64,000 bases of DNA from Octopus bimaculoides (lineage: Eukaryota): assembly GCF_001194135.2 (NCBI RefSeq), contig NC_068999.1, positions 54,372,715 through 54,436,714 on the forward strand, given 5' to 3'. Positions 29,589 through 63,507 of this stretch are shown one piece after another; position 1 is the first letter of the stretch, and the number at the start of each line of letters is the position of its first letter. The position numbers and the translations under genes were made by a program. Under the pieces are notes generated by a model, which was given only the letters and a program-made list of their open reading frames with translations, ran no database searches and was not told the DNA's origin.

Positions 29589-30445
29589 CAGGGTGCGTTG
29601 GCTGTCGCCATTTTATATTTTTACTTTTGCACATGCACGTTGATTGTTTCTGATTTTGTTGACTACACAGTATAGTAGGGTTAGTTGGGCACCATCTGTG
29701 AGAAAAACAACACCATGACGCAAATCACTCTGCCAGAAATTTGGAAACAGCATGCTGTACTGCTTAGAATTTGCACCAGAAGCTCCAATACGAACATTTC
29801 AAAGCGTTTGGGTGTCCCCAAAACACGTTCTGAGAATGATAAAAATCAAACATCCAGTCAACATCATGGTGTTTGGAGTGATCACTAGTGATGGCGACAT
29901 TATGCCTCCATTTATCTTCCCACACGACCTCAGACGCAACACAAAGGCCTACATCAAGTGCCTGGAGGAGGTAGTGCTGCCCTGGGTCAAGAGGGTGGCT
30001 GCTGGAAGACCCTATGTCTGGCAACAGCACTCTGCACCATGNNNNNNNNNNCTGGGTCAAGAGGGTGGCTGCTGGAAGACCCTATGTCTGGCAACAGCAC
30101 TCTGCACCATGCCACACAAGCAGGAGAACCCAGTCATGGCTCTCAGGCAATTTCTGCAACCATGTCACCCCTAACATCTGGCCACCGAACTCCCCAGACT
30201 GCAACCTCTTTGATTATTATGCATGGGGTGCAGTTGAGTGAGAGACCAACAGAACTCCTTGTAACACCAAAGATGAACTGAAGTCAAGGATAATGGCAGC
30301 ATTCACCAACTTAAATAAGGAGACTCTTCTAGAAGAGTTGCAAAAGATACTGAAGTCATTTGAAGGCTGTGGTTGAAGCTAATAGTGAATTTATTGAATA
30401 AATTTACTCTTTACTATTTCAAGATATTTTTATGTAATTTTGCTA
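29589..30445 (+). mobile_element. Internally deleted Tc1/mariner DD37D (maT-type) transposon
   Basis: Starts cagggtgcg; N-terminus MTQITLPEIW joined to VMVFGVITSDG..WQQ(H)SAP..WPPNSPDCNLFDYYAWG. There are 37 residues between the second and third catalytic positions, and the second D is mutated to H. Confidence 0.88.
30042..30051. other. Assembly gap (10 N) with a 60-bp duplication across it
   Basis: 29982-30041 is repeated at 30052-30111. Confidence 0.95.
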
Positions 30446-39750: not shown

Positions 39751-40200
39751 ACAAGACAACCAATTTTGATCCATTCTGGCAGCTCCACACAAACTAACAT
39801 GACCTCCAGTGGAACTAACACACGTATTGTAACCCCATCAGGTGGAATGGCTCGCACACAAGGTCCCGGTCAAAACAAACTTGTAATTGTCACTCCTCCA
39901 ACCCGTCCAACAGGAATGGGTGTACAGACGTCTTGTTTCACTAGTGGCAGCAGCAATACATCTACGCCTACAATTGTGAAATTAGTCACAGCACCAAATA
40001 CAAGCTCCAACAGTTCAAAGATTGTTGTCATGTCAGTTCCTTCAGGTGCAAATTCAAACTCACAAACTTGCTCTACCATAATGCAAACAAACAGCACAAG
40101 TACAGCACCAGTTTCCACCACAACTCATGATATGGGCATGAAAAGTATTTTCAGTGCTACACCATCAATCGCTATTAAGAAAGACTCCAACAGCCCATAA
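39751..40200 (+). CDS. TAF6: TAF6 last coding exon (S/T-rich tail, TAA at 40198-40200)
   Basis: tttcacag acceptor, in frame, contains IVKLV; AATAAA at 40535-40540. Confidence 0.88.
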   Translation, partial: TRQPILIHSGSSTQTNMTSSGTNTRIVTPSGGMARTQGPGQNKLVIVTPPTRPTGMGVQTSCFTSGSSNTSTPTIVKLVTAPNTSSNSSKIVVMSVPSGANSNSQTCSTIMQTNSTSTAPVSTTTHDMGMKSIFSATPSIAIKKDSNSP

Positions 40201-43200
40201 AGGTTATATTCTTGCTGCCACAAAACGTTATCAAATAATTATTTTTGATTGACTGTTGTTCCTGATGCTATTAAGACAGACTTTGGACAGTCCTGAAAGA
40301 ATCTTTTCAAGATAAGTGGAGAAAAAAAATGTCCATTTTAATACCCAGTTTTTACGGACTGTGGTGCTTTGAGGTATTGGGGAAATTTTTATCAAGCATT
40401 TATCAAGAAATGGCTAATGACCTAACAAGTGACTATTGAGGCATTCAGTCAATTCAATCATTTCATGCTACAATTAGACAAATTAAATGGTTTCAAAGAC
40501 ATGTTGTAGGAGAAGAGAAATTTTATGCAATCCAAATAAAAACCATTTTCAGTCTTCAACAAATATTTTCAGGTGTACTCTGAAAAATTTATTTCTTTGT
40601 TGTGGTTTATTAATTATATTTTAGTAAAGCAGTTTGGTACCTCTTGGTCTTCTTTGAGATGTTTCTCTAAGATAGAATATTACAGCTTGTGCCGTTCTAT
40701 TTTTTATATACATCATGAATATTATACACACTGGTATTTTAACTTAAGGCTATTTCAAATGTGTATATTGATTTAAGTGTAACCTTGTTAGCTGTATTTA
40801 CCGATTTCTGCATCAGAACAAGCATTTTTTGCTTAACTCAAAATGCCTGAGGAGACACTGTGTCTAACATTCTACCAATGTTCTGAACAAAGCCCTGTTT
40901 TTTTTAACATGAGTTTTTTTTTTTTTTAGATGTTTCTGAAACAAAATTGTTTTCATATTTACATTCCCAATGAATATAAGAAAAAAATGATCTTATACTT
41001 TAAAAATAGGTAAAGGGCTGGTGACAGGAAGAGTAACCAGCCACAAAATACTGCTTAGAAAAGTGGACATAAAATCTACAAAATTCTAATCACAAGGCAT
41101 TGCTCAGGTAGATAAAATTATAGATTACTAATTCAAATATCAAATGTGTATTCATACCCCACTATAAGTTTCTGAGTTTATTTCAGTGTAGGATACTTAA
41201 ATTTTTATAATCTCACTTCATCCAGCTTTGAGGAGTGAGTACCATTTGCAATGGACAGGTAACATATCCAGAGAGAGAGAGAAGTTTATCTCTTGTCCAC
41301 TTAACATTATTTAACTTGGATCCAATATTGAATTTTAGTAACTTTTGGAGACTTTATCCCTATGTATATAGGAGTAACACACTGTAGGCCACTGCTGAAT
41401 ACTTTGTCCTAACAGATTTCACTTTCTTATCAGGTGGTCTCAGTGCTTGGCATCATGGCCAAGTGTCCTCTTTCATAGCTTTGGGTCAACTACTGAGAGG
41501 AAGAGATGGACAGAAACCATGTGGTAAACCCATTACCCTATCATATCTTCACCATCTTTCTTTCTTTTCCAACTATGGTAACCTTGAATCTCCCCTAGAG
41601 CAAGATACCTGTTCCTGTCCTTCTATGATAATTTAGCCCCTAATCACCTGGCTAGCATGAAGACTGCTGCCATTTTAGGGAGTAGTATTAAGGACATAAA
41701 GCTCTCAATGTTACTGCCACCTCAGTTAAGGGATCTTTTCTTGCAAGTTACTTGGTGACCTCACTATTGCTGGTACCACATAAAAGCACACAGTACACTC
41801 TGCAAAGTGGTTGGCAACAGGAAGGGTATGATGATGATGATGATGATGGTAGCGGTGGCAAGGAGGAGGATGGTGATTGGGGGTAGGATATTCTGCAACT
41901 TGACCTTCCCTGCACTTCTTGAATACTGGGAACTGTAAAACTTAAGAATTAATCACCTTATCTATCTGACTTGTTGATTTTTTTACCCATGGGTCAGCTC
42001 TGAATACACTCTTGGTCAGTGACATTCCAGTCATGACCATCCTTTTTTTTTCTCCTTACCAGTAATATATCTCTCAGTATTCAATATCTGATATGGACTT
42101 GATTTTTGAGTAGGTAGAGTGTGATTTGACATGAGATTTTACTGCTATATCTAGCAAATCAAGTCACCAAGTAGTAGTTCTGATTGACTACTAGGCTAAA
42201 ATTTTCGTGCCAGTGACATGTAAAAGGCACCTAGTACAATCTAAAGAGCAGTTGGCATTAGGAAGGGCATCCAAATGTAGAAACCAAGTCAAAACAGACT
42301 GGTGCATGGTGCAGCTCTCTGGCTTATCATTTCCAGTCAAATCATCTAACCCATGCCAGCATGGAAAACAGATATTAAATGATGATGATGATTTTTTTTT
42401 CAACAGATCTATGGAAATATAGACTATATAGCCTTCATCTTCAGAATCATTATAAAGTCCTTGTACAATTTCAGATTTACAAAACTCTATTTCTATATAA
42501 GTGATAAAAGTAATCTGTGAAAAGGATAAATGAAATAATTTATTACATTTTTAGAGAGATTTATTCTCGAGATTGTTAATTTTCATTGTGATGTAATGTT
42601 AATGCTCTAGAAATGTATTTGTAATCTGTAGCAGATTAGTTACACTTGCCCAAAGGACTTATATAGAATGTTGTTTAGCTGAACCAAACAGCTGTTTTTA
42701 TATTGCCTCATGAGTTAAAATTATTTAGGTACCATGGGCAAGTGTCTTTTACTATAGCCTTGGTGTAACCAAAGCCTTGTGAGTGGATTTGGTAGACGGA
42801 AACTGAAAGCTCATCATGTGTGTATTATCATCATCGTTATCATCAGCATCCAATAAGCCTTGCACAGTACCTCACAGACCCATTCCACCCTACTGGCATG
42901 ATCCGGAGACAAGCCAGGGCAAGACATCCAGTGCCGATATGGTTCACAGGCTTAGGGAAGTGGAAGATCCATGATCTCAAGCACAAGCAAAAGAATCCCC
43001 TAAATGTTCAATGCCATTCCCTGCATATCAGGTTTTATATCAGAGTGATCTTCTAGAGACATGCTTTCACAAAAGCTAAAGTGTACCTAACTCACAGTGG
43101 TCCTCCAGCATGCTGGACACGAACACAGGATTTCTTAGGACCTATGCTATTGCTAGATAGTCGTTGAACATATACTAGGTTCATCCATCCTTTTGACAGG

Positions 43201-43681
43201 TCTTGCTTTTAATTCTGCTGGGTTTCTAGCAACCCTCCTCACCAGGCAAGCCTTGTGGAAGTGGGAGTTTAGTCATCAACAGCCCAGCTATGTAACAAGT
43301 TGTACTGGATTACATACACACTCACAAAAAAAACTATTGGGTTAATATAAAGATCTTCATCCGTTAATAAAAAAAAAGAAAGAAAAACAGCCTGCTGGGT
43401 GTTAACAACTGTGGAGAAAACGAATATGACAAAAGAAATTTGCGCAAACGAACCTGGGAGGTGGGGAGAGGACTTTCGGAAAATTCACAAGATCTGATTT
43501 TTCGTCATAATTTTCGGGTAAATGGATATATATTGATTTTTTTTTTATGGAATCCCACGTTTTTGGTTATGGAGGATCCGATTCTGAAAAATAAAATTTC
43601 AAAAATCGCATTTTCAAATTTTCAATTCTCCGGCCTTGGCCTTCAAGCAAGCTATCCACATGCTAGAAATAACAGCCAAAC

Positions 43682-44104
43682 CTCACAAAACTGCGATAAT
43701 ATAATGAAAGGAATATGTAATCAATCTCCTCACCTTTCTGCAAAGATTTCTTTCAGAGTAATTTCCCGCAGTAATATAAANNNNNNNNNNNNNNNNNNNN
43801 NNNNNNNNNNNNNNNNNNNNNNNNNNNNNNNNNNNNNNNNNNNNNNNNNNNNNNNNNNNNNNNNNNNNNNNNNNNNNNNNNNNNNNNNNNNNNNNNNNNN
43901 NNNNNNNNNNNNNNNNNNNNNNNNNNNNNNNNNNNNNNNNNNNNNNNNNNNNNCTGTCTAAAATTCAAAATGAACGGTTTTGTCTGTTTCTGCATGCATT
44001 ATAGTGAAACAGCAAAAGGGTCGCGGCAGTGCCCGGTCACTAAAACGAAAAAAAACCCCAGTCTAATAGGTAGGTGTTCATTATGTTATCGCAGTTTTTG
44101 TGAG
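43682..44104. mobile_element. Probable TIR element spanning an assembly gap
   Basis: ctcacaaaactgcgataatataatgaa (43682-43708) is inverted at 44078-44104. Confidence 0.55.
43781..43953. other. Assembly gap (173 N)
   Basis: Run of N. Confidence 0.99.
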
Positions 44105-46329
44105 ATATAGGCGCAGGCATGGTAAGAAGCTTGCTTCCCAACCACATGATTCCAGGTTCAGTCCCACTGCCTTTGTTCCCCCCCCCCACTATCGCTTGGC
44201 AACTGATGTTGGTGTGTTTACGTTCCCGTTATCTAGCGGTTCGGCTAAAGAGACCGATAGAATAAGTAAGTACTAGGCTTACAAAATTAAGTCCTGGGGT
44301 CGATTTGTTCGACTAAAAGCGTTGCTCCAGCATGGCCGCAATCAACTGACTGAAACAAGTAAAAGAATAAAAGAATGTGTGTGTGTGTGCGCGCGCGCAT
44401 ACACTCGATAGGGTTCTGTTGGGATGAAAAAAAAATCAGAGACTAACGGTCATTGCCCCCAATTTCTCATCAGTTTTAAACTTCTGACATCATACTGCCA
44501 TGAATGAAATTTGCTGCGCGTCTATCATATTTCAATGCTTTTTTCACTTCATATTTTATTTTAATAGTTCTTTCGTTCGTTTTAACTATCATAGCCTAAG
44601 GATCAACGTCTTATCTGTCAATCTATACATACATACAGACACACATTGAACTAAAGGGTGGGGTTTCTTTCACTATTATGAAATATTACCAGAGTATAGT
44701 TAAAAATGCAGTCCTGAATCAGTTTTTTATTTCTTTCTCCAAAAACTGGTATCATCGTTTGCTTAAGCGTTTATCTCTCACATCTTACAAATATCGAAAC
44801 AACAAACGAATCTAGAAATAGCAGCCAATTTCCCATCAAACCATAGCTTACTGTTTAAAAGAAACAAAAAACACATTGGACAATTGTTGTCCGACTTCCC
44901 CTGAAACAAAAATGGTAATAAAAAGACGGTATGGTCATGGCGAGAATATTAGGATTGACTTAGGGTTAAATATCATCTATATTGTCGACGAATCTCAGGT
45001 GACCTTTTGCTTGTTTCAGCTATTAGACTGCGGCCATGCTGGGATACCGCCTTGTGAAATTTTAGTCGAATTTTTTAAAGCCTGGTACTTAGTCTATTTG
45101 TCTTTTTTGCTGAGCCGTTAAGTTACGAGGACGTAAACACACCAACACCGGTTGTCAAGTGGTGGTAGGGAACAAACACGTTGATATATACATATATAAC
45201 AAGCTTGTTTCAATTTCTGTCTACCAAATCCACTCACAAGGCTTTGGTCGGCCCAAGGCTATTGTGGAAGGCAACTATCCAAGGTACCATATAGTGGCAT
45301 TGAACCCAGAATTATGTGATTGGAAAGCTAAATTCTTACCACACAACCACCCCTACTAGTGGGTTCCTGTTGCTTTCTTTACTTGACAAGTTTGATAAGT
45401 GTCATGGAGTTTTCGTGGGAGAATATAAAGGCGGCTTTCCATTACTTTCATTCAACTATATAGATATGGTCGCAGCAACTGCCTAGGTATTCAAAATTTA
45501 ATACAAATACAGCGAAGTATTTTCCCCAATCTATCGCACCTACACGGTACTTAATTTTATCGACTCCGGAAAGATTAAAAGCTGAGTTAATACTGGAGTG
45601 GAGTCCAACTCAGAAATGCCGCGAAGTATTTTGTCCGGCACTCTGACAATTCTGCTACTTCGTAGCTCGTGTCAAATTATAAATGCCATTTTTGTTTAGT
45701 TCTCGATTATTTTCAACATAAGCGACAATTATAAAAAATACATAATTACGATTACTATGTACATTATACTTTGCACACTGCTAATATTCTAATCACCAAC
45801 AGATCTAGAAAAGGTGAAAAGACTTCTATATTAATTAACCATATTTAAATAAATTTCTTTCCTTTCTAGAAGAGCGTTAAACGGAGGAATGAGGAAGAAA
45901 AAAATCATTAACAGCGATTACTCAACACTAATTATGCAGAAAAAATTTTATATAACTAGTGTCGGCTGTTAAAAGCAAAAAAAATGTGAAGATTAAAAGA
46001 TTTCATTTCGAACGTTGTACAATGTTATGCCGATGAGTTCCCTAAGATAGAATTAAATATGACGGCGAGATGGTTGAGTAATACGTGACCCGGCTTCTTA
46101 GTTTTCAGTAATTTTAATTCGTTCGTAAGTCGCGTAAGAAAAGTACAAACAGATTCTTTCCTATTTGTCCGCCTTATAAATTTCAAGGGAAAAAACAAAA
46201 CGTAAAGCCTGAGAACAATATGATGTCAACGCCACGACATAATAATCGTCGGCACATTTAATGAAAATACTAGACTTTCAGCGATTGTGAATGTATTTGG
46301 AACAGTTGCAGGTACCAGTATTTATACTA

Positions 46330-46405
46330 TTCATCCACGTGACTACCCCCTTGAGGCCGCCTTAACCAATGAAATGTTGACGTTCAACCTAACCGGAAGT
46401 CAGTA
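46330..46405 (+). promoter_or_regulatory. Putative eIF4A core promoter
   Basis: E-box CACGTG 46336-46341, CCAAT 46366-46370 and ETS motif CCGGAAGT 46393-46400 in a CpG-enriched region just upstream of a strong donor. Confidence 0.6.
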
Positions 46406-46471
46406 ATTGTTCCACTCGGACATAACAGTACCTCTGTAATTGAGAAAAAAACAACTGACAAAGTGAACAAT
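46405..46471 (+). other. eIF4A: Putative eIF4A exon 1 (5'UTR plus the first two bases, AT, of the start codon)
   Basis: aacaAT|GTGAGT donor at 46471/46472; in-frame TGA at 46464-46466 excludes an earlier start. Exon start is approximate. Confidence 0.65.
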
Positions 46472-49084
46472 GTGAGTATTCTAATTGATATTGTTGTTAT
46501 TACCATCATCAATTGCATATTAGTTTTTCTACAAGGATCTTTATTACTGTAATGATTTGAGCTTAATTTGATTAGCCGCTAATTTATCCCAGGTATTATG
46601 TTGTTATTGTCTGAAAAGAAGCACTTGTTTCACTCCCCACCGACGCATATTCATCTGCTGTTGCTCCTCATGTCGACATTGATCAACGACTGACATATAT
46701 TGTATAGCTTAGCACTTACGAAATATATAGACATGTATGTGTTTGTGTGTTCGGCAACATTCAAGTTTTTTTTAAATTTTTATTATTCTTTCTATGTCTC
46801 GTCTCAAATTATTATTTTGTAATGTAGTAGTAGTATTATTTTGTATTATTTTGTAATCATAATTGTAGTCGGAGGTCGACTTCGCCTTTTATCCTTGCGA
46901 GATAAGGTATCGTTAACATTAATTACTAGGGTCGATTTATATCAGCAATGTCCCTCCCCACATGTTCGAGTGTTACAAATCATTAGACGTATCAATCATG
47001 TACTGATGACTCATCCATGGTAAATTATCCCGTGTAATATCCTTTACTCTGTCGGCATCACCAACCATAGACACACACTTATATACTATATATATTGCCG
47101 GAAAGAACGCAGAAAAATCGAGAAACTCGGAGTGAATGAGCAATTAAATACACGAAAAGATGTATATTTAAGAGTAGATATACTCGATTGAACTGAATTG
47201 CTACCCTAGTATTTTACTACTAACCTATATTATCGATCCTTTTTGAAAGAAATGAGCCAAGTCGTTTCCCGGTAGTTGGAATACCGGTCCAGTTAGTCGA
47301 ATAGAAACATCTGGTTCGACGCTCCTGTCTTATACGACTCTGATTTTTTTTTCTTCAAAACGTGATATTAGACTCAAACTTCCGACTGAATAATAACTTG
47401 TGTACAATTGTTTGTATTAATATTTTTTAGACCCTGATCTACTACATATTGTCAAAAATGTTCAAGCCTTGGACATTTCGTTCTTCTCGCTCCCTCAAAC
47501 CTCTGAGAGGTATAATGTATCTAGGACTACATTATCTAATATGTCCTTATTAACGACAGTAATATGTTATTTGAAGGAAATTTAACTGATACTTTTTTTA
47601 ATGGTGATCGACCACTTAAAGAAGTCTCTTTCGTTGGGTGTTAGTTAAGTCGATTGGTGGAGGATAAAGAAATCATGACGATTGTGGCTATGAATTGCTG
47701 AGGGTGATTGCAAATAATTGACATTCATGTGTTTCCCAAATACAATGACATTTTACGAAGTCTTTATTAGTTATTACGATTCTGTTGGTTATTTTTAACT
47801 AGTAAGTCTGATTCTGTAAGCTGTTCTGTGTCAAAGCTGGCCTTTATCCCCAAGATGGCTAATCATTCAATCATGAGATATGATTGTGCAAACCTTGTCC
47901 CGTGCATACTTACTTATTTAGCCTCTAGTTTCTCATTATTTATTACTTTTTTATTTACGTTTTATGTGTTAATTAAAGCTATTAAATTGTTACTAGAACT
48001 TAATTTCGAGAAAAGCATGAAAGCCACATATCGTTTCCCATCGTCTCCCGCCTATCACTTCGAAGCTTTGTGTGCTTTAGTAAGGAAGCATTTATGTAAT
48101 ATTGTTAGTAAAACGTAGCATTTTTATGGTATTATCAGTCTGAGTGTCAAAGATGATTGAGTATGAAAGTAAGTCGAGCATCGCAAACCTGCTTCGATTC
48201 TCTTCTGAAATTAATCCATTTACACAGTTAATAATCCATATAATCACCTTTTTACGTCCGCTTTTCATGACGTGTAATATGTTTAATGTATACATTTAAA
48301 AATAAAATTAACTTGAAGGATCTTGCGCGTATGCGTCTAACATTTGTAGTATATCTAATGTACTACATACACATCGATACTTTTACCTACGCAATATACC
48401 CATTGAAAAAGACATTGAGATTTTACATTTTCGTCCAGTTAATAGTATATTGTAATATTCGTTCTTGTTCTCTGAGATATTGTGAACGTGTGGCATGAAC
48501 CGAGTAGCCAAACCGGTAACATAACCCACCCAAGCATGTCTATTAAAAGATAAACGCGGGAGAGAGGCAGGCAAGACATGTGTATATTGAGATTAAACCG
48601 CGGGAAATATTCTTTTATTGGATATGATCATTGTATTGTGGCCATGCTAGAACACCGCCTTCTTAGGACACAGTTGCTAATATCCACCCTGAGCCGGCAG
48701 AAACGTCAGCACGCCGGGTTAAATGCTTAGCAGTTAAGTACCAGTTGCGTACTGAAGTCGATCTAATCGACTGGTCCCCTCCCCCCAAATTTCGGGCCTT
48801 GTACCTAAAGTAGAAAATATATATACGTAGTGACCGTGTAGTTAAGAAGTTCGCTTCTCGACCACGTGGTTTTCGACTTCATCCAAATGCACAGTATTAT
48901 TTGACCAATCACTTGTAGGTGGAATATCGTTGACAGAAACACTATATGGTCATTTGTACTAATCGGTACGTTCGACTGTCCCTTTGCTTCGAAAGGTAAT
49001 CATTCGATGAACTAACTCCTAGTGTTACATATGGTGGACTAAAAAAAAAAGCTCTTGAATACAATATCCCAGTATGGCCGCAAC

Positions 49085-49137
49085 CCTAAGACCTAATCGG
49101 TTATATATATATATATGTGTATATATATATATATGTG

Positions 49138-49221
<84 letters not shown>

Positions 49222-49240
49222 CATACATACACACACACAT
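49085..49240. repeat. Long (TA)n microsatellite
   Basis: Direct reading. Confidence 0.97.
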
Positions 49241-51153
49241 AGAGAGAAAGGCTTGCATGACTAAAAATTGGAAAGTGTATGAACAAAACCTTTGGTCCTG
49301 TAGCCACTTGTAACTTTCTGCCGATTAAAAATAAGAAAAAAAGGTGTGTTTGTGTGTTAAGACATTTACTTCCCAACTACATTGTTCCGAATTCAGTCCC
49401 ACTGCGTGACAACTTGGGCAAGTGTCTTCTGTAGCTTCGGGCCGAATAAAATCTAAGAGTAGATTTGGTCAACGGAAAGAAGTCCGTCATGTGTGTCTTT
49501 ATATCTGTTTACCCCACCACCACTTGACAACCGGTGTTTGTGTGTTTACGTCCTCGTGACTTAGCGGGTCTGCAAGAGAGCAATAGAATAAGTACCAGGG
49601 TTTTAAAAAATACTGGAGTCAGTTCTTCGCTCGACTAAAAATTCCTCAAGACTGTTCCAACGTGGTGACACTTGTTTCGCCTGTTTAAACCTCGAGACAT
49701 GCGGCTCCTGGTTATAAAACAATGATGATTCCACACTAGATCCTAGCATATATGTGTGCGTGTAGTTATTTTTATAAGATCCTCCCCATTCTATATGCAA
49801 CTAGAACGAAAGTCAGAGAAAATCTAGATGTTTCTATGACTTACTAGGCATAGAGAAGCAACTACAACAGTTACAATGATTAATTTGCTCCAAATACAAC
49901 CAAATTTTTACTTTCTCCATAAAGGAATTAACAAAATAATTTTAAAAAATTTCTATTCGGTTCTTTGTACTTTGCTTCGCATATTTATTATGGGAAATAG
50001 TTTTGTTTGTTTTTATTTTAGCCCCCTGGTAGGTCCTGATCGAGCAGGCCTGTAATCCCAGGCGTTCCAGTCAGTCCTTTTATTTTATTTTATTTTATTT
50101 ATTTATTTTTTGAGGATATTGTGTAATATAGGGAAAATTCGCTGCTATTTGTATCGGGTCGTGCGACCCCACAGGCTTGGTATGGAAAGAAAGAGTTTAG
50201 TTGGGTGGGATGTTTGGCTTTGTCTATTCACTTATTCGTACAAAATAGAGAGGTGGATACGTTGAATGTTCTCTAATGATTTTTGTTTGATCAGTTTTGG
50301 CGGTTGTGTAGTAGTAAATTGGTTTATTCAATGGGGAAGGGATAAAATAGTTTTTTAATGACTTGTCATGTGGAACGCCTAAATACTGACCGACATTGTT
50401 GACCTTTCAGTGGGAAGTAGTATATTTTCTTGGTAAAACAGTTATCACAGAACGACTACGTTTCTGTGAACTAATTCCATTTCGGAAAGGCATGAATGTC
50501 ATAAACTCCTGTATACCCTAAATTCTCAAATTGTTTGCCTTTGCGAGAAACAGTGTAACTAAACTGCATCTTCAACATACATGTTCCTTTGCATTCATGC
50601 ATAATCGATTAATTTACATATATTCTTAGGCTTACAGATGAAGCTAAATGCTATTTTGTTTTAAGTAAAATAAGATTTAGGACCATTTTGCATAATATTT
50701 GAGTTTCTTATTGAGTGTAAATCCTAAGTTGATTCTTTATTTATTTTCCATAGAAAATGTATTAGTAATATATCGACTAGGTAAGTTTTATTGTTGTTTA
50801 AATATGTTAACGATTTCATAATATTTCTGAAATATTCAGACAACTTTTTTAACATATTTCTTTTGTCGTTTCACTCCTCGGTCTACATGTGTGTGTAGAC
50901 CCCTACGTGAGCGCTTGATCTGTTAGAAAGAGCAGCTAAACATTCCACAAATTATACCCCCAATCGTCTTCAAAATTTTTAAAAAATACACATCGGATAT
51001 TGTCTTAGATACTCAGTACTTCGGAAAAGGACGAGATAGCGAGATCTGACACGGGATTACGCAGCAAACAAACCAGTTATTACATATCACCCAGTTTACA
51101 CACGTACACCAAGCTCAGGATGAAAAATTGTTTAACATTTAAAAAAAAAATAT

Positions 51154-51750
51154 TTGGATCTATTTCAAAACGGGGGCACCAGTTTTCATTTATGTTTTAT
51201 GTAGTGTTTTTGGTACCGAAAGACTTTCAAACTTCGTATACTTATCTATTTTGTGTTATAGAACAGAAAAAAAATTTTGTATTCGAATTTATTTCATGTA
51301 AAAAATTGTCTTATTTCGATAATTTCTACTAATCACTGACGTCTACTCAGTTGAAAACAGTTAGCGCTGTAACGGTGTATATCGTATTAATCCCCTAACC
51401 CTAACTCTAGAATCCGAACTCTAAAATTGTTACACACATAGATACGCACAGCGTAATTTATTATATAAACAATATATGCGTATAAATTACGATTAAACCG
51501 GATGAAATATGTCACAGGGAATAACATTTTTATGACCGCCCAGCAGTTGAATAGACGTCAGTGATTGGTTGAAATTACAGAAATACGACAACTTTAACAT
51601 GGAATAACTTGCGATGTACGTTTTTTTTTGTTAAGAAGACTAAGAGTAAAAGATGTTTTATTATTTTATATGACACAGTCTACCAGTGTCCCAAGTTTCA
51701 TAGTGTTTCGTTAAGAAAATACTGGTGCCCCCGTTTTGAAATAGATCCAA
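51154..51750. mobile_element. MITE-like element with a perfect 30-bp outer inverted repeat and an inner inverted repeat
   Basis: ttggatctatttcaaaacgggggcaccagt (51154-51183) vs 51721-51750; aatcactgacgtcta (51331-51345) vs 51552-51566. Confidence 0.8.
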
Positions 51751-54165
51751 TTATTTTTTATCACGTATGTGGCTGGAAATTAATGCTTACATCATGAATG
51801 TCATATAGTTAGTTCTTTTCTTTCTCACTCTTTTGACTATATACACACACACACACACACACTCGTTTCTTACCCTACCAACATTATATTGATAGATTCA
51901 TTACAGTGTCGGACAAAGTTCCTTTTGATTATTTGTTCCAGCTCTTTACGATCTAAATTCAAATCTTCCGATGTTTGTTAGGTAGTAATGGTCAATTTAA
52001 TCGATTGCTTCTCATCTGTGTCAATATGCAGTAGTCCAAATTCCTACCCAACTGTGGGTCTTTGGTGACTTGTGGCGCACACCAGTTCGAGTAAAACTGC
52101 TGTCACAATTGATGATATCTATTTGCAATACACACAATATGACTTAACAAAATTCACACATGCTGCGCATTCACCCCATTATACCCATTCTCTCTTCTCA
52201 AAGTGGACCCCATTGAAGCAATAATGCAAAAATAGTTTTGCATCTTGATAATAAAGTATTGCTGGTGAATATCTTCTGTGAACAAAATTAAATAAAGCTG
52301 TAAGCTATTTCATATTGCATTCTTTGGTCAAAATTGGCTGTCATTGTAATTGCAAATGAAATGTCTTTCGATATTCTTTCTGGCTTTTCATCTTTACGAT
52401 ATCTATGAAATAAAGTACCAATCCTGTTCTGTGATTGATTTTTTTTTAAAGAAATCAGTTGTGGTTTGACCTAGAAAAGTTTGGGCTCCAACAGATGTAA
52501 AATGGCCCAAAGCATGCCTTATGTCAAAACATCAACACTACAACTCCATTAGCTTAGGGCTCAAGGCAAGTTTGTGTGAAATGAAACATTAAACCCAGTG
52601 TTGCATCTTCTGCTCTATCTGTTGTTCATGTTATTAAACTGTTGATAGATCTACTTTGGTGGGAGTAAACCAAATTTTATTGGAATTATCAAAGAAATGT
52701 CATACACTTTTCACTTTGCTGCCTCATTAAGGTTTGTATTTTAAAAAAAAATTAATCAGGTGAAGCAGATGTGGTGACCTGATGTGATGGGGTGCATTGT
52801 CACTAAGCATATGTTGGCATGACTGGTTAATAATTTCACTTTGCAGTCATATAATTCTGGGTTTGACCCAGAATTGTGATACATTGGACATAGGTTTTCT
52901 ACCATAACGTTTCAACACAAGCCTTTCGAGTGCAATTAGTTATGCAGAAACTGCTGGAAGTGACAGCTATTACTAGTTATTGCTGGAGAAGAGAGACTAA
53001 ATTTACCATAGCAAGACCTGAACTCATTACTAGAAATAACAACATTACTTCCCTCAAATCACACCCTAAGGTTTTATTAGACAATATAGTCTTTGAGGCA
53101 CTTTCTAGATGATAAAAGAACAAATGGTAATTGTGTGTGTGTGTGAGATTGTAGAAAATACAACTTGATATCTATAGTCTTAAAATTTAGAAAGATTATG
53201 TTTGAGAATGAATATCAGACAAATTATCAGTGTCCAGTTTTGTTTCTCTCATCTGTCCTTAAGAAAAGTTGTGTGTATAAGGATAAATACAAAAATAGGA
53301 TATAACAGTCCACTGCTGGACATATCCCCTTTCCTGTCTGAAGGATTTTTTTTTTTTGTTGTACCAACGACCTGTTAATTTGACACTGACCAAGCACTGT
53401 CATCTGTCTTAATACTCATTTTTGCCAGCTAGGTGGACTGGTACATTGTTTTACATAACTCCAGTCTCTCCAGCTGTGTGCTAGTGCAGCCCTCTCTCCC
53501 TCCAGTTGTCACATGTTCTGCAAGATAATGAGTGGGAGGCCCAATAGAATGTCTGTGTTTATTCATAGTAACATGGACACTCTGAAAATTGCAATGAATG
53601 AAAGTATGCTACCAAATCATTTTTGATTGTAACAGCTGTAGTTACTTGCATATATGAAGTTCAGGTATTTAACATATTACATCAATTATTATTTTGTTGA
53701 AAATCACTGAAAAATACAAATGTAGTAAGTGGTGCAATTCAGTTTCTCTCTTGTGTGTATTTATCCCTTGCCACATGAAAGAATGTACAAATACAGTGAC
53801 AAAATGAATGCTCAGCTCCACTGCCTGTGGTTTTTTTCAATTGATTTTAAAAATAGGAAATTTGGATGGATTTAATAATAAAGCTAACTTTCTCATTAAG
53901 AATCTGGTGTTTGGAACAACAAAATTGTATAAATATATAATGGGAAGCTCAAATTTTGAAGAGTATTTTCAAATAGTTTGGTATTGTAGAACCAAGGTTG
54001 GTATAAAAAAGGGATATCAGTTACAATACCTTTGTGTGATCTTCAGGAAATTATAAGAGTATACTACATTTCATCATGGCACCAACACTAATGGGGTTGA
54101 CTTGTTGCTCATAAGATTAAAGAGTGAAAACTGTATTTTGTGTAATGTAAGTTAGTGTTCATATT

Positions 54166-54209
<44 letters not shown>

Positions 54210-56046
54210 GGGGGTGACCCCCTTCGATCATGAATGACCATGGAATTGCACCTAGAAAGTTACCCACCAAGGTACAAGTCTGGGCAAGGTTGTTTATGGA
54301 AGACCAACTGTCACCCATGTATACCAGCCTCCCCTCTTCACACCACCGATGTTATCCAAGGGAAAGGCATATAGATATATATATAAATCAGCATATTAGT
54401 AAAATACTTCCAGGCAACAGTTTATTAAAAGTAATATTGGAAAATAAGATATTATTTATGGAACTGTTAGTTAAAGAATAGTCTACCACAAAGGAGCGTC
54501 TTGCTCTATTATTGCTTTGCAACGTTTACTCCAATGACCAACCAAAAGTGATGACATAAGCCAATTTATTTTTGCTGCTGGTCTGGATACCACTGCACAA
54601 AATAAAATATTCTCAGTAGAGAAAAGTTGATTAATTTCCTTGATTGGTTAAGTCACAAGTATGTAGCTTTCATTTGAGAAAGAGTGAAACAAGTGCTACC
54701 TCCAAAGAACTTGAGCTCTGTGAATACCAGTTGTACTTAATTTTCATCCTTGAATCCCACATCCAGAAGACAAAAGACAAATAGGAGTGCTTGTAACAAC
54801 ATTATTAACAAGGTCACAAAATTAAGATGGCAGCAGTCTTCAGGCTCTGTGTTTTAATTGCCCTGGCTCCTTGATTCTTTTTAAACTGGGTACACCAACC
54901 CTGTATGAGAATGATCTAGCCCTTTCTGTTGACTGAGAACATGCTCTTAAACCAATTAGTGCTGACATAATCTATATTTTGGCATGGTTAGCTCCACCAG
55001 CCATTTGGAGACTAGCTGCCAGTTTGAAGAACATCTGTGGCACCAAATAGATAAATAACTAAACACTCCTTAAACATGTCTCTGTCTTTAGGGCTAACAC
55101 TACAACAAATGCCACAGGACCAACTCTGGAAAGAAAGAAACAGCAGTCTACTACTCTTGGCAACAATGTAAGTGATGACAGCTGAATAACTGTCCACTTA
55201 ATGTAAGTGTAAAGTGAACAGGGGAAAAAATTCTTTGAATTGAATTGGGGTTGGTGAAACCAGTGTAGCACTCAACAAATCGCACTCAAATTACACACAG
55301 TGTAATTAGGATTCAGCTCCTAATTACACCATGTGTGACTATTGCACAGTCACGGACTATGGAATAACTGTTGAGGCATTCTTTAAGAATCATTAACCTC
55401 TGTTGATTTTGCCATGTACAATGAAGATGCTGAGAAATTTTGTTCAGTCAAAACTGAACAAAATCTCACTGAATATGAAGTGGACTTGAAACTACAAATG
55501 AATGCATATGTATGTCGAGTGATTTTCCTCTCGTTTTTGTACTCAGTTGTGTATGTTTGTGTGTGTACTTTACAATCTTAGTATTGATTACACTTAATGT
55601 GTGTTACCTATATAGGTTATTGTGAGGATGTAGGAGGCATGGTGGTTGTAAAAGAAGTTCAGGTGCTTACAGTCATTGTGTTGTTCTCCATGAGTTAAGC
55701 ATATAACCCTGCTTTTTCTAGTTAGCCAACTTGAGCACAATAAATGAACAACCACCACTACTACTATACTCACACACTCACACACACACACACACCTTTT
55801 TAAGAGTGAGCCAATAATTAAACATTTAATTAAATGCCTAATTTGAGGGACACCTGTTCAGGCTTACATTTTCTGAAACAAAAATATCTTATTGAAATAA
55901 TTTTAATTATTTTTAGGCAACATAAACTTGGCTTATCACAAAGGGCTTTTCATGTGTATGTTGTAGCAGATTGTTAGAGACTGAAATAACTATAATTGGA
56001 ATGGTTTTCTTGTTGATTCCTTCAACTTCTGTTTGTTTCCTTTCAG

Positions 56047-56104
56047 GTCTTCAGAATCATCACAAAAGGTTCAATCTCCCGAAGATTGTAGCAGTGAGAT
56101 TGAA
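56047..56104 (+). CDS. eIF4A: eIF4A exon 2 ((AT|)G SSESSQKVQSPEDCSSEIE)
   Basis: Strong acceptor tttcctttcag and donor gtaagt; 58 nt, phase 2-0; ends in IE directly before SNYDEIV, like vertebrate EIF4A1 exon 2 (..GVIE|SNW). Confidence 0.8.
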
Positions 56105-57162: not shown

Positions 57163-57295
57163 TCAAACTATGATGAAATTGTCTCTACATTTGATGAAAT
57201 GAAATTGCGGAACTCACTGTTAAGAGGGATATATGCTTATGGTTTTGAAAAGCCTTCTCTTATCCAGCAAAGAGCAATTGTACCTTGTATAAAAG
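57163..57295 (+). CDS. eIF4A: eIF4A exon 3 (Q motif, [21 protein letters not shown])
   Basis: ttctag/gtaaat, 133 nt. Confidence 0.97.
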
Positions 57296-57400: not shown

Positions 57401-57433
<33 letters not shown>

Positions 57434-57496
57434 TATATATATATACATGTGTGTGTATCCTGCATTTTAACCCCAAAATACTTCCCAATTTTTTAG

Positions 57497-57636
57497 GTCA
57501 TGATGTTATTGCCCAAGCTCAGTCAGGCACAGGAAAGACTGCCACTTTCTCTATTGCCATTTTGGAACAGTTGGATATGGATCTCCATGAGTGTCAAGCT
57601 TTGGTCCTGGCTCCCACTAGGGAATTGGCTCAACAG
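57497..57636 (+). CDS. eIF4A: eIF4A exon 4 ([18 protein letters not shown])
   Basis: ttttag/gtaact, 140 nt; motifs I and Ia. Confidence 0.98.
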
Positions 57637-58958: not shown

Positions 58959-59124
58959 ATTCAGAAAGTCGTTGTGGCTCTTGGAGATTACATGGATGCA
59001 AGATGCCATGCTTGTATTGGTGGAACAAATGTTCATGATGATAGGTTACAATTATGTGAAGGTGTTCACACGGTTGTTGGAACTCCTGGACGTGTTAGTG
59101 ATATAATCCATCGAAAATGGCTTG
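58959..59124 (+). CDS. eIF4A: eIF4A exon 5 ([16 protein letters not shown])
   Basis: cctcag/gtaagt, 166 nt. Confidence 0.97.
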
Positions 59125-60066: not shown

Positions 60067-60176
60067 TAACTTCCCATATTAAAATATTTGTCCTTGATGA
60101 AGCAGATGAGATGTTGTCCCGAGGTTTCAAAGATCAAATCTACAGTGTTTTTAGATACATGCCCCAGAATGTTCAG
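60067..60176 (+). CDS. eIF4A: eIF4A exon 6 ([18 protein letters not shown])
   Basis: ttttag/gttagt, 110 nt; DEAD motif. Confidence 0.98.
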
Positions 60177-61457: not shown

Positions 61458-61601
61458 GTGATATTATTGTCAGCCACTATGCCACCAGATGTCTTTGAAG
61501 TCACCAGACAATTTATGAGGAAGCCTATTAAGATTTTAGTGAAAAAGGAAGAGTTGACTCTGGAAGGTATCAAACAATTCTTCGTTCACATTCAGCAAGA
61601 G
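61458..61601 (+). CDS. eIF4A: eIF4A exon 7 ([20 protein letters not shown])
   Basis: caacag/gtgagt, 144 nt; SAT motif. Confidence 0.98.
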
Positions 61602-63369: not shown

Positions 63370-63507
63370 GAATGGAAACTAGACACGTTAATAGATTTAT
63401 ATGGAACTCTGACAATCACTCAAGCTGTTATATTCTGTAATACTCGTAGGAAAGTAGATTGGCTCACTGATCGGATGTTGGCAAAAGATTTCACTGTTTC
63501 TGCTATG
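63370..63507 (+). CDS. eIF4A: eIF4A exon 8 ([27 protein letters not shown]); the gene continues beyond the window
   Basis: tttcag/gtaatt, 138 nt. [24 protein letters not shown] and NTRRK diagnose eIF4A1/2 rather than eIF4A3. Confidence 0.97.

What the first reader, a model, noticed from the sequence alone, without database searches (positions are those of the whole stretch)
46464..56104. eIF4A start codon is assembled by splicing: AT|G across a 9,575-nt intron
Seen: the 58-nt exon upstream of SNYDEIV has no ATG and needs two upstream bases (phase 2); it begins with G. The promoter-proximal exon ends aacaAT|GTGAGT, with an in-frame TGA six bases earlier. Joining them gives aacaATGTCT (A at -3) and MSSESSQK...EIE-SNYDEIV. 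Established: vertebrate EIF4A1 intron 1 is also phase 2 but lies after several codons. Inference: translation of this initiation factor is strictly gated by one splicing event, so any change in acceptor choice creates, moves or destroys the AUG.
Basis: partly seen in the sequence, partly recalled or inferred. Interest (0 to 1): 0.72.

Follow-up and report, generated by a model that had tools for sequence, protein, structure and literature searches.

The report
Split start codon in octopus eIF4A paralogue
The start codon of this octopus eIF4A-like helicase gene really is divided AT|G by a 9.6-kb intron, and cuttlefish share the split, but this is a rare and already documented gene layout, it is already in the public annotation, and nothing shows that it regulates translation.

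Summary
The window is Octopus bimaculoides chromosome CM046619.1. One GT-AG exon chain (46470-46471 | 56047-56104 | 57163-57295 ...) translates exactly to the public 401-aa protein XP_014779042.1 / A0A0L8GQT2, and the annotated gene range starts on the A at 46470. I found no O. bimaculoides transcript. The cuttlefish orthologue has the same layout (CTCAAT|GTAAGT ... cag|GTCTTC, 17,041-nt intron), and six RNA-seq contigs from six runs read across that junction. O. sinensis keeps TGAACAAT|GTGAGT, and its annotation starts a 401-aa product there.

Two corrections. First, this is not the canonical eIF4A. It is a faster-evolving tandem paralogue ("B") lying 11.2 kb upstream of the canonical gene. 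The canonical gene has the same nine introns, but its first exon ends ATGGG|GT. Oyster has 29 coding bases before a phase-2 intron. So this looks like an old phase-2 intron that the start codon has moved onto. Second, the "strict gating" inference is not supported. The unspliced RNA already carries AUG, followed at once by a stop, and every intron-containing gene needs splicing to make its reading frame.

Split start codons are known, for example in VAMP1, and were surveyed in 2006. This is a new member of a known kind, of low interest.

The parts
43001..52000 (.). CpG-undepleted domain around the first exon, which probably marks an unmethylated promoter region
   Evidence: Observed/expected CpG in 1-kb bins is 0.67-1.25 here, against 0.03-0.3 in the flanking gene bodies and 0.36 for the whole window. 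The link to a promoter is inference.
46336..46400 (+). Promoter-like motifs upstream of the AT: CACGTG at 46336-46341, CCAAT at 46366-46370 and CCGGAAGT at 46393-46400
   Evidence: Read directly. All three motifs are conserved in O. sinensis, but the whole 1.5 kb upstream is about 85% identical, so that conservation says little. A CCACGTG also lies about 55 nt upstream of the canonical paralogue's ATG. No function was tested.
46401..46471 (+). 3' part of the first exon: 5' UTR ending in AT. The transcription start site was not determined, so the left boundary is arbitrary.
   Evidence: No ATG lies between 46377 and 46469; the nearest upstream ATGs are at 46369 and 46374. The annotated gene range starts at 46470.
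46464..46466 (+). In-frame TGA 6 nt upstream of the initiator A
   Evidence: It is conserved in O. sinensis. It rules out any N-terminal extension read through this exon.
46470..46471 (+). AT: the first two bases of the start codon and the only coding bases of exon 1
46472..56046 (+). Intron 1: 9,575 nt, phase 2, GTGAGT...TTTCAG. The unspliced RNA reads ATG-TGA.
   Evidence: It has no Rfam family match and no ORF of 100 aa or more, only microsatellites.
56047..56104 (+). Coding exon 2: 58 nt, supplying the G of the ATG and then SSESSQKVQSPEDCSSEIE
57163..57295 (+). Coding exon 3: 133 nt, SNYDEIV...PCIKG, carrying the Q motif
57497..57636 (+). Coding exon 4: 140 nt, with motif I AQSGTGKT and motif Ia PTRELA
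58959..59124 (+). Coding exon 5: 166 nt
60067..60176 (+). Coding exon 6: 110 nt, with the DEAD box
61458..61601 (+). Coding exon 7: 144 nt, with the SAT motif
63370..63507 (+). Coding exon 8: 138 nt. Exons 9 and 10 lie beyond the window end, at window-equivalent positions 65349-65518 and 65610-65754.
   Evidence: with the locus L001 extending past the window.

Best explanation
**What it is.** The window holds the 5' two-thirds of Octopus bimaculoides LOC106875421. This is an intact, ten-coding-exon tandem paralogue ("B") of the translation initiation helicase eIF4A.

**How it is expressed.**
- Its first exon is almost entirely 5' UTR and contributes only the AT of the initiator codon.
- An ordinary U2-type intron of 9,575 nt (GTGAGT...TTTCAG) is removed, and the next exon supplies the G.
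- The mature mRNA therefore reads ...UGA ACA AUG UCU UCA..., and translation starts by normal scanning at that AUG to give MSSESSQK....

**Where the layout came from (inferred).** This is a historical accident and not a regulatory switch.
- eIF4A genes carry an old phase-2 intron near the N-terminus that is always followed by G TCN. Oyster has 29 coding bases before it, and the canonical cephalopod paralogue has 5 (ATGGG|G TCA).
- In paralogue B the start codon came to straddle the intron. The most economical route is loss of three G's from ATGGG|GT, which gives AT|GT.
- This happened before octopuses and cuttlefish diverged and has been kept since.

**Shown versus inferred.** Shown: the sequence anatomy, identity to the annotated protein, conservation, and transcripts across the cuttlefish junction. 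Inferred: use of the junction in O. bimaculoides itself, homology of intron 1 across species, and the 3-base deletion route.
For: **Gene model**
- One GT-AG chain translates exactly to the 401-aa public protein (protein).
- The annotated range starts at window position 46470.

**Conservation of the split**
- O. sinensis keeps TGAACAAT|GTGAGT, and its annotation starts a 401-aa DEAD-box product on that A.
- The cuttlefish (Acanthosepion pharaonis) orthologue reads CTCAAT|GTAAGT, then a 17,041-nt intron, then cag|GTCTTCTC.
- Six RNA-seq contigs from six runs read ...ttcaactcaATGTCTTCTC... across that junction. AT|G is the only placement of the junction that obeys GT-AG.

**Comparison of gene structures**
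- Coding exon lengths are: octopus B 2/58/133/140/166/110/144/138/170/145, octopus canonical 5/61 then identical, cuttlefish B 2/70 then identical, cuttlefish canonical 5/61 then identical.
- Oyster has 29 and 82 nt for the first two exons, with a phase-2 intron.
- Exon 2 starts with G TCN in all five genes.

**Orthology and integrity**
- The order B then canonical, on the same strand, is the same in both species.
- The cephalopod eIF4As form a clade with 100% bootstrap support.
- The protein has DEAD and Helicase_C domains and all helicase motifs are present.
- Exon 1 lies in a CpG-undepleted domain.
Against: - I recovered no spliced transcript from O. bimaculoides or any other octopus. No Logan RNA-seq contig encodes this protein, whereas several encode the cuttlefish orthologue.
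- The octopus junction therefore rests on database gene models and on conservation.
- ATGTRAGT occurs three more times inside the intron.
- The B pair groups with only 45% bootstrap support. Orthology rests mainly on gene order, gene structure and the shared MSS.../NYDEIV features.
- One cuttlefish contig (L002) has a different upstream exon that adds an in-frame ATG 17 codons earlier. 5' ends can therefore vary in this gene family.
- Homology of intron 1 across molluscs is inferred from phase and the following G TCN, within a poorly alignable N-terminal region and with only one outgroup.
Confidence: 0.85

Rival explanations
1. The split AUG is a regulatory device. On this view, production of the factor is controlled by the choice of acceptor, or of first exon, which would create, move or destroy the AUG.
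For: - The layout has been kept since before the octopus-cuttlefish split.
- Skipping exon 2 would give AT|T, with no AUG, followed by a short out-of-frame ORF.
- A cuttlefish contig with another 5' exon changes the first in-frame AUG.
Against: - The pre-mRNA already contains AUG, because the donor must start with G. Only the codons that follow change.
- I found no alternative acceptor or isoform for the octopus gene.
- Five of the six cuttlefish contigs show one and the same structure.
- The canonical paralogue does without the split.
- The -3 context is not conserved: A in octopus, T in cuttlefish.
- Retention over long periods is expected for any intron position and needs no selection for gating.
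Confidence: 0.06
2. The true octopus start lies elsewhere. An unannotated first exon, either inside the 9.6-kb interval or further upstream, would splice to 56047 and supply an intact ATG, and the AT|G model would be an annotation convenience.
For: - I saw no octopus transcript.
- ATGTRAGT is not rare in the interval.
- The cuttlefish genome annotation (P0121, 472 aa) and contig L002 show alternative upstream exons.
Against: - Two protein records for O. bimaculoides (XP_014779042.1 and A0A0L8GQT2) and the O. sinensis annotation give the same start.
- A 2-nt coding exon cannot come from protein homology, so these models probably rest on transcript alignments. That is my inference.
- In cuttlefish, every contig keeps the AT|G junction, including L002.
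- The site lies in a CpG-rich, promoter-like domain.
- The in-frame TGA at -6 blocks any extension read through this exon.
Confidence: 0.07
3. The octopus B copy is a silent or decaying duplicate, in which case its start-codon layout has no functional meaning.
For: - It has the longest branch in the tree. It is 84% identical to cuttlefish B, whereas the canonical pair is 91% identical.
- No RNA-seq-derived protein from any octopus appeared among the hits.
Against: - The 401-codon frame is intact, all nine introns are GT-AG, and every helicase motif is retained.
- The domain scores are strong.
- A product of the same length is annotated in O. sinensis.
- The cuttlefish orthologue is transcribed in at least six libraries.
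Confidence: 0.05

Closest known systems
Vertebrate VAMP1, whose start codon is split across exons 1 and 2 so that exon 1 carries only the coding bases AT (TOGA2 preprint, doi 10.64898/2026.06.30.735536, read)
   Same: The architecture is the same: the first exon is 5' UTR plus AT, the intron is phase 2, and the G comes from the next exon. A 2-nt coding exon poses the same difficulty for annotation.
   Different: It is an unrelated gene in a different phylum. I did not inspect the VAMP1 sequence here.
"Start codon introns" surveyed by Nielsen and Wernersson 2006 (PMC1626468)
   Same: The paper recognises introns in phase 1 or 2 at codon position 1 as a class, which it calls "introns disrupting the start codon".
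   Different: The paper's main finding is an excess of phase-0 introns just after the ATG. It calls the disrupting kind "relatively rare". The present case is of the rare phase-2 kind.
Canonical cephalopod eIF4A: O. bimaculoides LOC106875415, and its orthologues in O. vulgaris, O. sinensis and A. pharaonis
   Same: It is the tandem neighbour on the same strand. All nine introns are in the same positions and phases, and exons 3-10 have identical lengths. Exon 2 also begins G TCN.
   Different: Its ATG is intact in exon 1 (ATGGG|GT). Its first intron is 1.7-2.9 kb instead of 9.6-17 kb. It evolves more slowly. In cuttlefish the gene is far more compact: 6.7 kb against 70.5 kb for B.
Oyster (Crassostrea angulata) eIF4A-I-like gene
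   Same: It has a phase-2 first intron followed by G TCT, and then a phase-0 intron just before SNWDEVV.
   Different: Twenty-nine coding bases (9 codons plus 2 nt) precede the intron, so the start codon lies well inside exon 1.

Membership tests
eIF4A subfamily of DEAD-box RNA helicases | Two RecA-like helicase domains (Pfam DEAD and Helicase_C) | tested here: met
   PF00270 scores 157.6 bits and PF00271 scores 116.7 bits, both far above their cut-offs.
eIF4A subfamily of DEAD-box RNA helicases | Q motif and motifs I, Ia, Ib, II (DEAD), III (SAT), V and VI (HRIGRGGR) | tested here: met
   Read in P0001: [40 protein letters not shown] and HRIGRGGR. The motif definitions come from my own knowledge of the family.
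eIF4A subfamily of DEAD-box RNA helicases | Closest relatives are eIF4A-I/II proteins and not other DEAD-box helicases | tested here: met
   The best hits are proteins named eIF4A or eIF4A-I-like, mostly at 71-79% identity over 297 aa. The gene falls inside a cephalopod eIF4A clade with 100% bootstrap support.
eIF4A subfamily of DEAD-box RNA helicases | RNA-dependent ATPase and helicase activity, and a role in the eIF4F complex | not testable with these tools
   This needs biochemistry. Whether paralogue B acts in general or specialised translation is unknown.
Genes whose start codon is split by a phase-2 intron | The first coding exon ends in AT and is followed by a GT donor | tested here: met
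   AACAAT|GTGAGT at 46466-46477.
Genes whose start codon is split by a phase-2 intron | The acceptor AG is followed by G, continuing the open frame into conserved protein | tested here: met
   tttcag|GTCTTC at 56047. The frame runs into SNYDEIV and the helicase core.
Genes whose start codon is split by a phase-2 intron | No other in-frame ATG is available to the same exons | tested here: met
   TGA lies in frame 6 nt upstream. Exon 2 has no ATG, and its frame is closed at 56000-56002 with no Met before the acceptor.
Genes whose start codon is split by a phase-2 intron | Spliced transcripts show the junction | tested here: inconclusive
   Met for the cuttlefish orthologue, with six contigs from six runs. 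For O. bimaculoides only gene models are available. The N-terminal peptide search found nothing.
   No octopus transcript data can be reached with these tools. Five of the six cuttlefish contigs share one structure, and the sixth keeps the AT|G junction.

The most novel reading that the evidence does not exclude
Coleoid cephalopods keep a second, faster-evolving eIF4A ("B") next to the canonical gene, with much longer introns and its own promoter. The AT|G split, together with variable upstream exons, would let the choice of 5' exon decide whether B is made, or with which N-terminus. One cuttlefish contig adds an in-frame AUG 17 codons upstream. That would amount to a cephalopod-specific, tissue-restricted layer of translational control.
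Probability: 0.07. Interest if true: 0.45.

Novelty: new member of a known kind. Interest (0 to 1): 0.2.

Why it matters
The value is mostly practical.
- **Annotation.** This is a clean, transcript-backed invertebrate example of a 2-nt first coding exon. Gene finders and homology-projection tools tend to miss that structure, and here it has been conserved since before octopuses and cuttlefish diverged.
- **Gene identity.** The work shows that cephalopods carry two tandem eIF4A genes with very different architectures and rates of change. Anyone studying translation factors or RNA biology in these animals needs to know this, because the window's gene must not be taken for the canonical eIF4A.
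- **Regulation.** The finding does not reveal a new regulatory principle.

Tried and rejected
- **N-terminal peptide search.** A protein search with only the 45-aa N-terminus, meant to fish out RNA-seq fragments from octopus, returned nothing because of the word index.
- **Flanks upstream of the canonical gene.** The 10-kb flanks upstream of canonical eIF4A in O. sinensis and O. vulgaris do not reach the B gene. I reached O. sinensis B through TAF6 instead, but only its first 15 nt.
- **Outgroup gene structures.** The Pomacea and Glandiceps proteins were not on record. Acropora returned only a transcript. The oyster is therefore the only outgroup.
- **Intron content.** The Rfam scan of 40000-64000 found no family, so there is no intronic snoRNA. 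Intron 1 has no ORF of 100 aa or more, only microsatellites.
- **Promoter alignment.** The 5' UTR and promoter of octopus and cuttlefish B do not align meaningfully, so I make no claim about conserved promoter motifs across that distance.
- **Literature phrase searches.** Several wordings for split or interrupted start codons gave few or no hits. I found no paper on cephalopod eIF4A paralogues.
- **Motif statistics.** I dropped the idea that the AT|GTGAGT motif is statistically significant on its own, because there are 4 occurrences in 15.8 kb.
- **Source of L002's first 31 nt.** These bases are not found in the 90-kb cuttlefish locus. They may come from a distant exon or from an assembly chimera. 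This is unresolved.
Full report
**1. The observation**

Reading the window directly confirms each sequence statement.
- The bases run ...AAAG TGA ACA AT|GTGAGT..., with TGA at 46464-46466, AT at 46470-46471 and the donor GT at 46472-46473.
- The acceptor is ...tgtttgtttcctttcag|GTCTTCAG..., with the exon starting at 56047.
- The exon 56047-56104 is 58 nt, has no ATG, and ends GAA|gtaagt.
- AT plus the 58 nt gives MSSESSQKVQSPEDCSSEIE. The next exon starts ttctag|TCAAACTATGATGAAATTGTC (SNYDEIV) at 57163, in phase 0.
- The frame of the 58-nt exon is open upstream only as far as a stop at 56000-56002, with no Met codon. It therefore cannot provide its own start.

**2. Whether it is more than chance**

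The motif by itself is not. ATGTRAGT occurs four times between the end of the upstream gene and exon 2. The case rests on other evidence.

*Identity of the gene and its annotation.* The window is Octopus bimaculoides chromosome CM046619.1 (assembly GCA_001194135.2), matching with no mismatch over the 27.5-kb overlap. A protein search with the assembled exons returned a 401-aa protein at 100% identity and 100% coverage. It is held as XP_014779042.1 ("ATP-dependent RNA helicase eIF4A-like", now "uncharacterized protein LOC106875421") and as UniProt A0A0L8GQT2, and it begins MSSESSQKVQSPEDCSSEIESNYDEIV. The annotated range of that gene begins exactly on the A at window position 46470 and ends on the stop codon, 1.75 kb past the window end.

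*Exon chain.* A script tried GT-AG junctions around the protein-matching blocks and found one chain that translates to this protein:

| Coding exon | Window coordinates |
|---|---|
| 1 | 46470-46471 |
| 2 | 56047-56104 |
| 3 | 57163-57295 |
| 4 | 57497-57636 |
| 5 | 58959-59124 |
| 6 | 60067-60176 |
| 7 | 61458-61601 |
| 8 | 63370-63507 |
| 9, 10 | beyond the window end |

*Promoter-like context.* Exon 1 lies in the middle of a 9-kb stretch where CpG is not depleted. Observed/expected CpG is about 0.8-1.25 at 43-52 kb, against 0.36 for the window and 0.03-0.3 in the flanking gene bodies. I read that as an unmethylated promoter domain, which is inference. CACGTG, CCAAT and CCGGAAGT motifs lie 70-135 nt upstream of the AT, and no ATG lies in the last 93 nt before it.

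**3. Related species**

*O. sinensis.* I reached the orthologous place by way of the upstream gene TAF6. The sequence there reads ...GTGTGAACAAT|GTGAGTAT, and that genome's annotation starts a 401-residue DEAD-box product on the same A. The surrounding 1.5 kb is about 85% identical, so conservation at this distance proves little. It is, however, a further gene model with the same start.

*Cuttlefish.* In Acanthosepion (Sepia) pharaonis the orthologue reads ...TTTCAACTCAAT|GTAAGT, then a 17,041-nt intron, then ...tatcaccag|GTCTTCTCAAAG. Six assembled RNA-seq contigs from six different sequencing runs read ...tttcaactcaATGTCTTCTCAAAG... across that junction. The alignment leaves a 2-nt ambiguity, and only AT|G obeys GT-AG. 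I found no transcript for an octopus. The search with the N-terminal peptide returned nothing, and no RNA-seq-derived protein close to the octopus B copy appeared.

**4. What the gene is**

It is not the canonical eIF4A. The canonical gene, LOC106875415 (403 aa), differs from the O. vulgaris protein named translation initiation factor 4A at one residue. It lies 11.2 kb further downstream on the same strand.

The cuttlefish has the same arrangement on one scaffold: B at 269,767-340,304 and the canonical gene at 386,493-393,225.

In a neighbour-joining tree the cephalopod proteins form a clade with 100% bootstrap support. The canonical group has 72% support and the B pair only 45%. Orthology of the B copies therefore rests mainly on gene order, on the shared AT|G structure, and on the MSS... 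start and NYDEIV motif.

B evolves faster. Octopus and cuttlefish B are 84% identical, against 91% for the canonical pair.

B is intact. It has DEAD and Helicase_C domains, all helicase motifs, and nine GT-AG introns.

**5. How the split probably arose**

Coding exon lengths:

| Gene | Exon 1 | Exon 2 | Exons 3-10 |
|---|---|---|---|
| Octopus B | 2 | 58 | 133/140/166/110/144/138/170/145 |
| Octopus canonical | 5 | 61 | identical to B |
| Cuttlefish B | 2 | 70 | identical to B |
| Cuttlefish canonical | 5 | 61 | identical to B |
| Oyster eIF4A | 29 | 82 | not resolved |

In the canonical genes the first exon ends ATGGG|GTAAGT and exon 2 starts cag|GTCAATGG in octopus or aag|GTCGATGG in cuttlefish. 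Cuttlefish transcripts confirm this junction. The oyster's first intron is again phase 2, and its exon 2 starts cag|GTCTCGG.

In all five genes the first intron is phase 2 and is followed by G TCN. The codon that straddles it is Arg in oyster, Gly in the canonical cephalopod genes and Met in B.

I infer a single old intron. The coding part of exon 1 shrank in cephalopods, and in B the initiator codon ended up on the junction. Loss of three G's from the run in ATGGG|GT would do this in one step and would also remove Gly2, changing MGS... to MS.... This account rests on a single outgroup and on a poorly alignable N-terminal region.

**6.

Nothing unusual is needed. A U2-type intron is removed and scanning ribosomes meet ...ACA AUG U....

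The donor departs from consensus at -1 (T, because of the AT). The six intron positions match GTRAGT perfectly in both species, which presumably compensates.

A donor after AT must start with G, so the genomic sequence and the pre-mRNA already contain ATG. With a GTRAGT donor the next codon is always a stop: ATG-TGA in octopus and ATG-TAA in cuttlefish. Splicing therefore does not create the AUG. It replaces the stop that follows the AUG with the open reading frame.

Dependence on correct splicing is shared by every intron-containing gene. I found no alternative acceptor or regulated isoform. The A at -3 is not conserved, since cuttlefish has T. The sister gene works without the split. The "strict gating" reading is therefore unsupported.

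The one hint of 5' variability is cuttlefish contig L002. Its first 31 nt come from elsewhere and add an in-frame ATG 17 codons upstream, while the AT|G junction is kept. In octopus the TGA at -6 forbids such an extension.

**7. Comparison with what is known**

Start codons split by introns are documented.
[quoted passage not shown] The present junction is already encoded in public gene models. I found no paper on cephalopod eIF4A paralogues. From memory it matches the oyster position, but that is a lead and not a result.

**8. Verdict**

This is a new member of a known kind, conserved across coleoid cephalopods, and of low interest beyond annotation and cephalopod translation-factor biology.

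Noticed in passing
window ~14000-40200 (+); last coding exon ends with the stop at about 40198-40200: The gene upstream on the same strand is TAF6 (TFIID subunit 6). It is annotated as 621 aa here and 662 aa in O. sinensis. A second CpG-undepleted patch at 12-15 kb may be its promoter. The order TAF6, then eIF4A-B, then canonical eIF4A is shared with O. sinensis.
   Followed up: partly
L003 (O. bimaculoides record 54,449,700-54,468,786), 11.2 kb downstream of the window's gene: This is the canonical eIF4A, in tandem with B, with identical intron positions and a gene span of 19,087 bp against 19,285 bp for B. A RING-finger gene follows it. In cuttlefish the two paralogues differ tenfold in size: 70.5 kb for B against 6.7 kb for the canonical gene.
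   Followed up: yes
window 30042-30051 and 43781-43953: There are two runs of N, which are assembly gaps. The second is 173 N and lies 2.5 kb upstream of exon 1, inside the CpG-rich domain, so part of the upstream regulatory region is unresolved in this assembly.
   Followed up: no
window ~29700-30280 (+): Open frames here read like a Tc1/mariner-type transposase remnant (for example ...PYVWQQHSAPCHTSRRTQSWL...PPNSPDCNLFDYYAWGAVE), duplicated around the 10-N gap inside a TAF6 intron. Pfam gave no hit at E<=0.001, so the resemblance comes from my memory only.
   Followed up: partly
L002:1-31 (cuttlefish RNA-seq contig from run SRR25158151): The first 31 nt are joined at a proper AG acceptor (L006:11483/11484) to the exon carrying the AT, and they add an in-frame ATG 17 codons upstream. 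They are not found anywhere in the 90-kb locus. They may come from a distant alternative first exon or from an assembly chimera. The cuttlefish genome annotation (P0121, 472 aa) uses yet another upstream exon.
   Followed up: partly
window 46336-46341; L003:9944-9949; L012 about 55 nt before the ATG: A CACGTG E-box lies shortly upstream of the start in octopus B and in the canonical genes of octopus and cuttlefish. In the canonical genes the surrounding sequence AATCCACGTGTGGC is identical between octopus and cuttlefish. It may be a shared regulatory element of cephalopod eIF4A promoters.
   Followed up: no
window 49102-49241, 54173-54207, 57404-57450: TA, TATA and CA/TA microsatellites lie inside introns 1 and 3. 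They are typical of octopus intronic sequence and I found no other feature in them.
   Followed up: no
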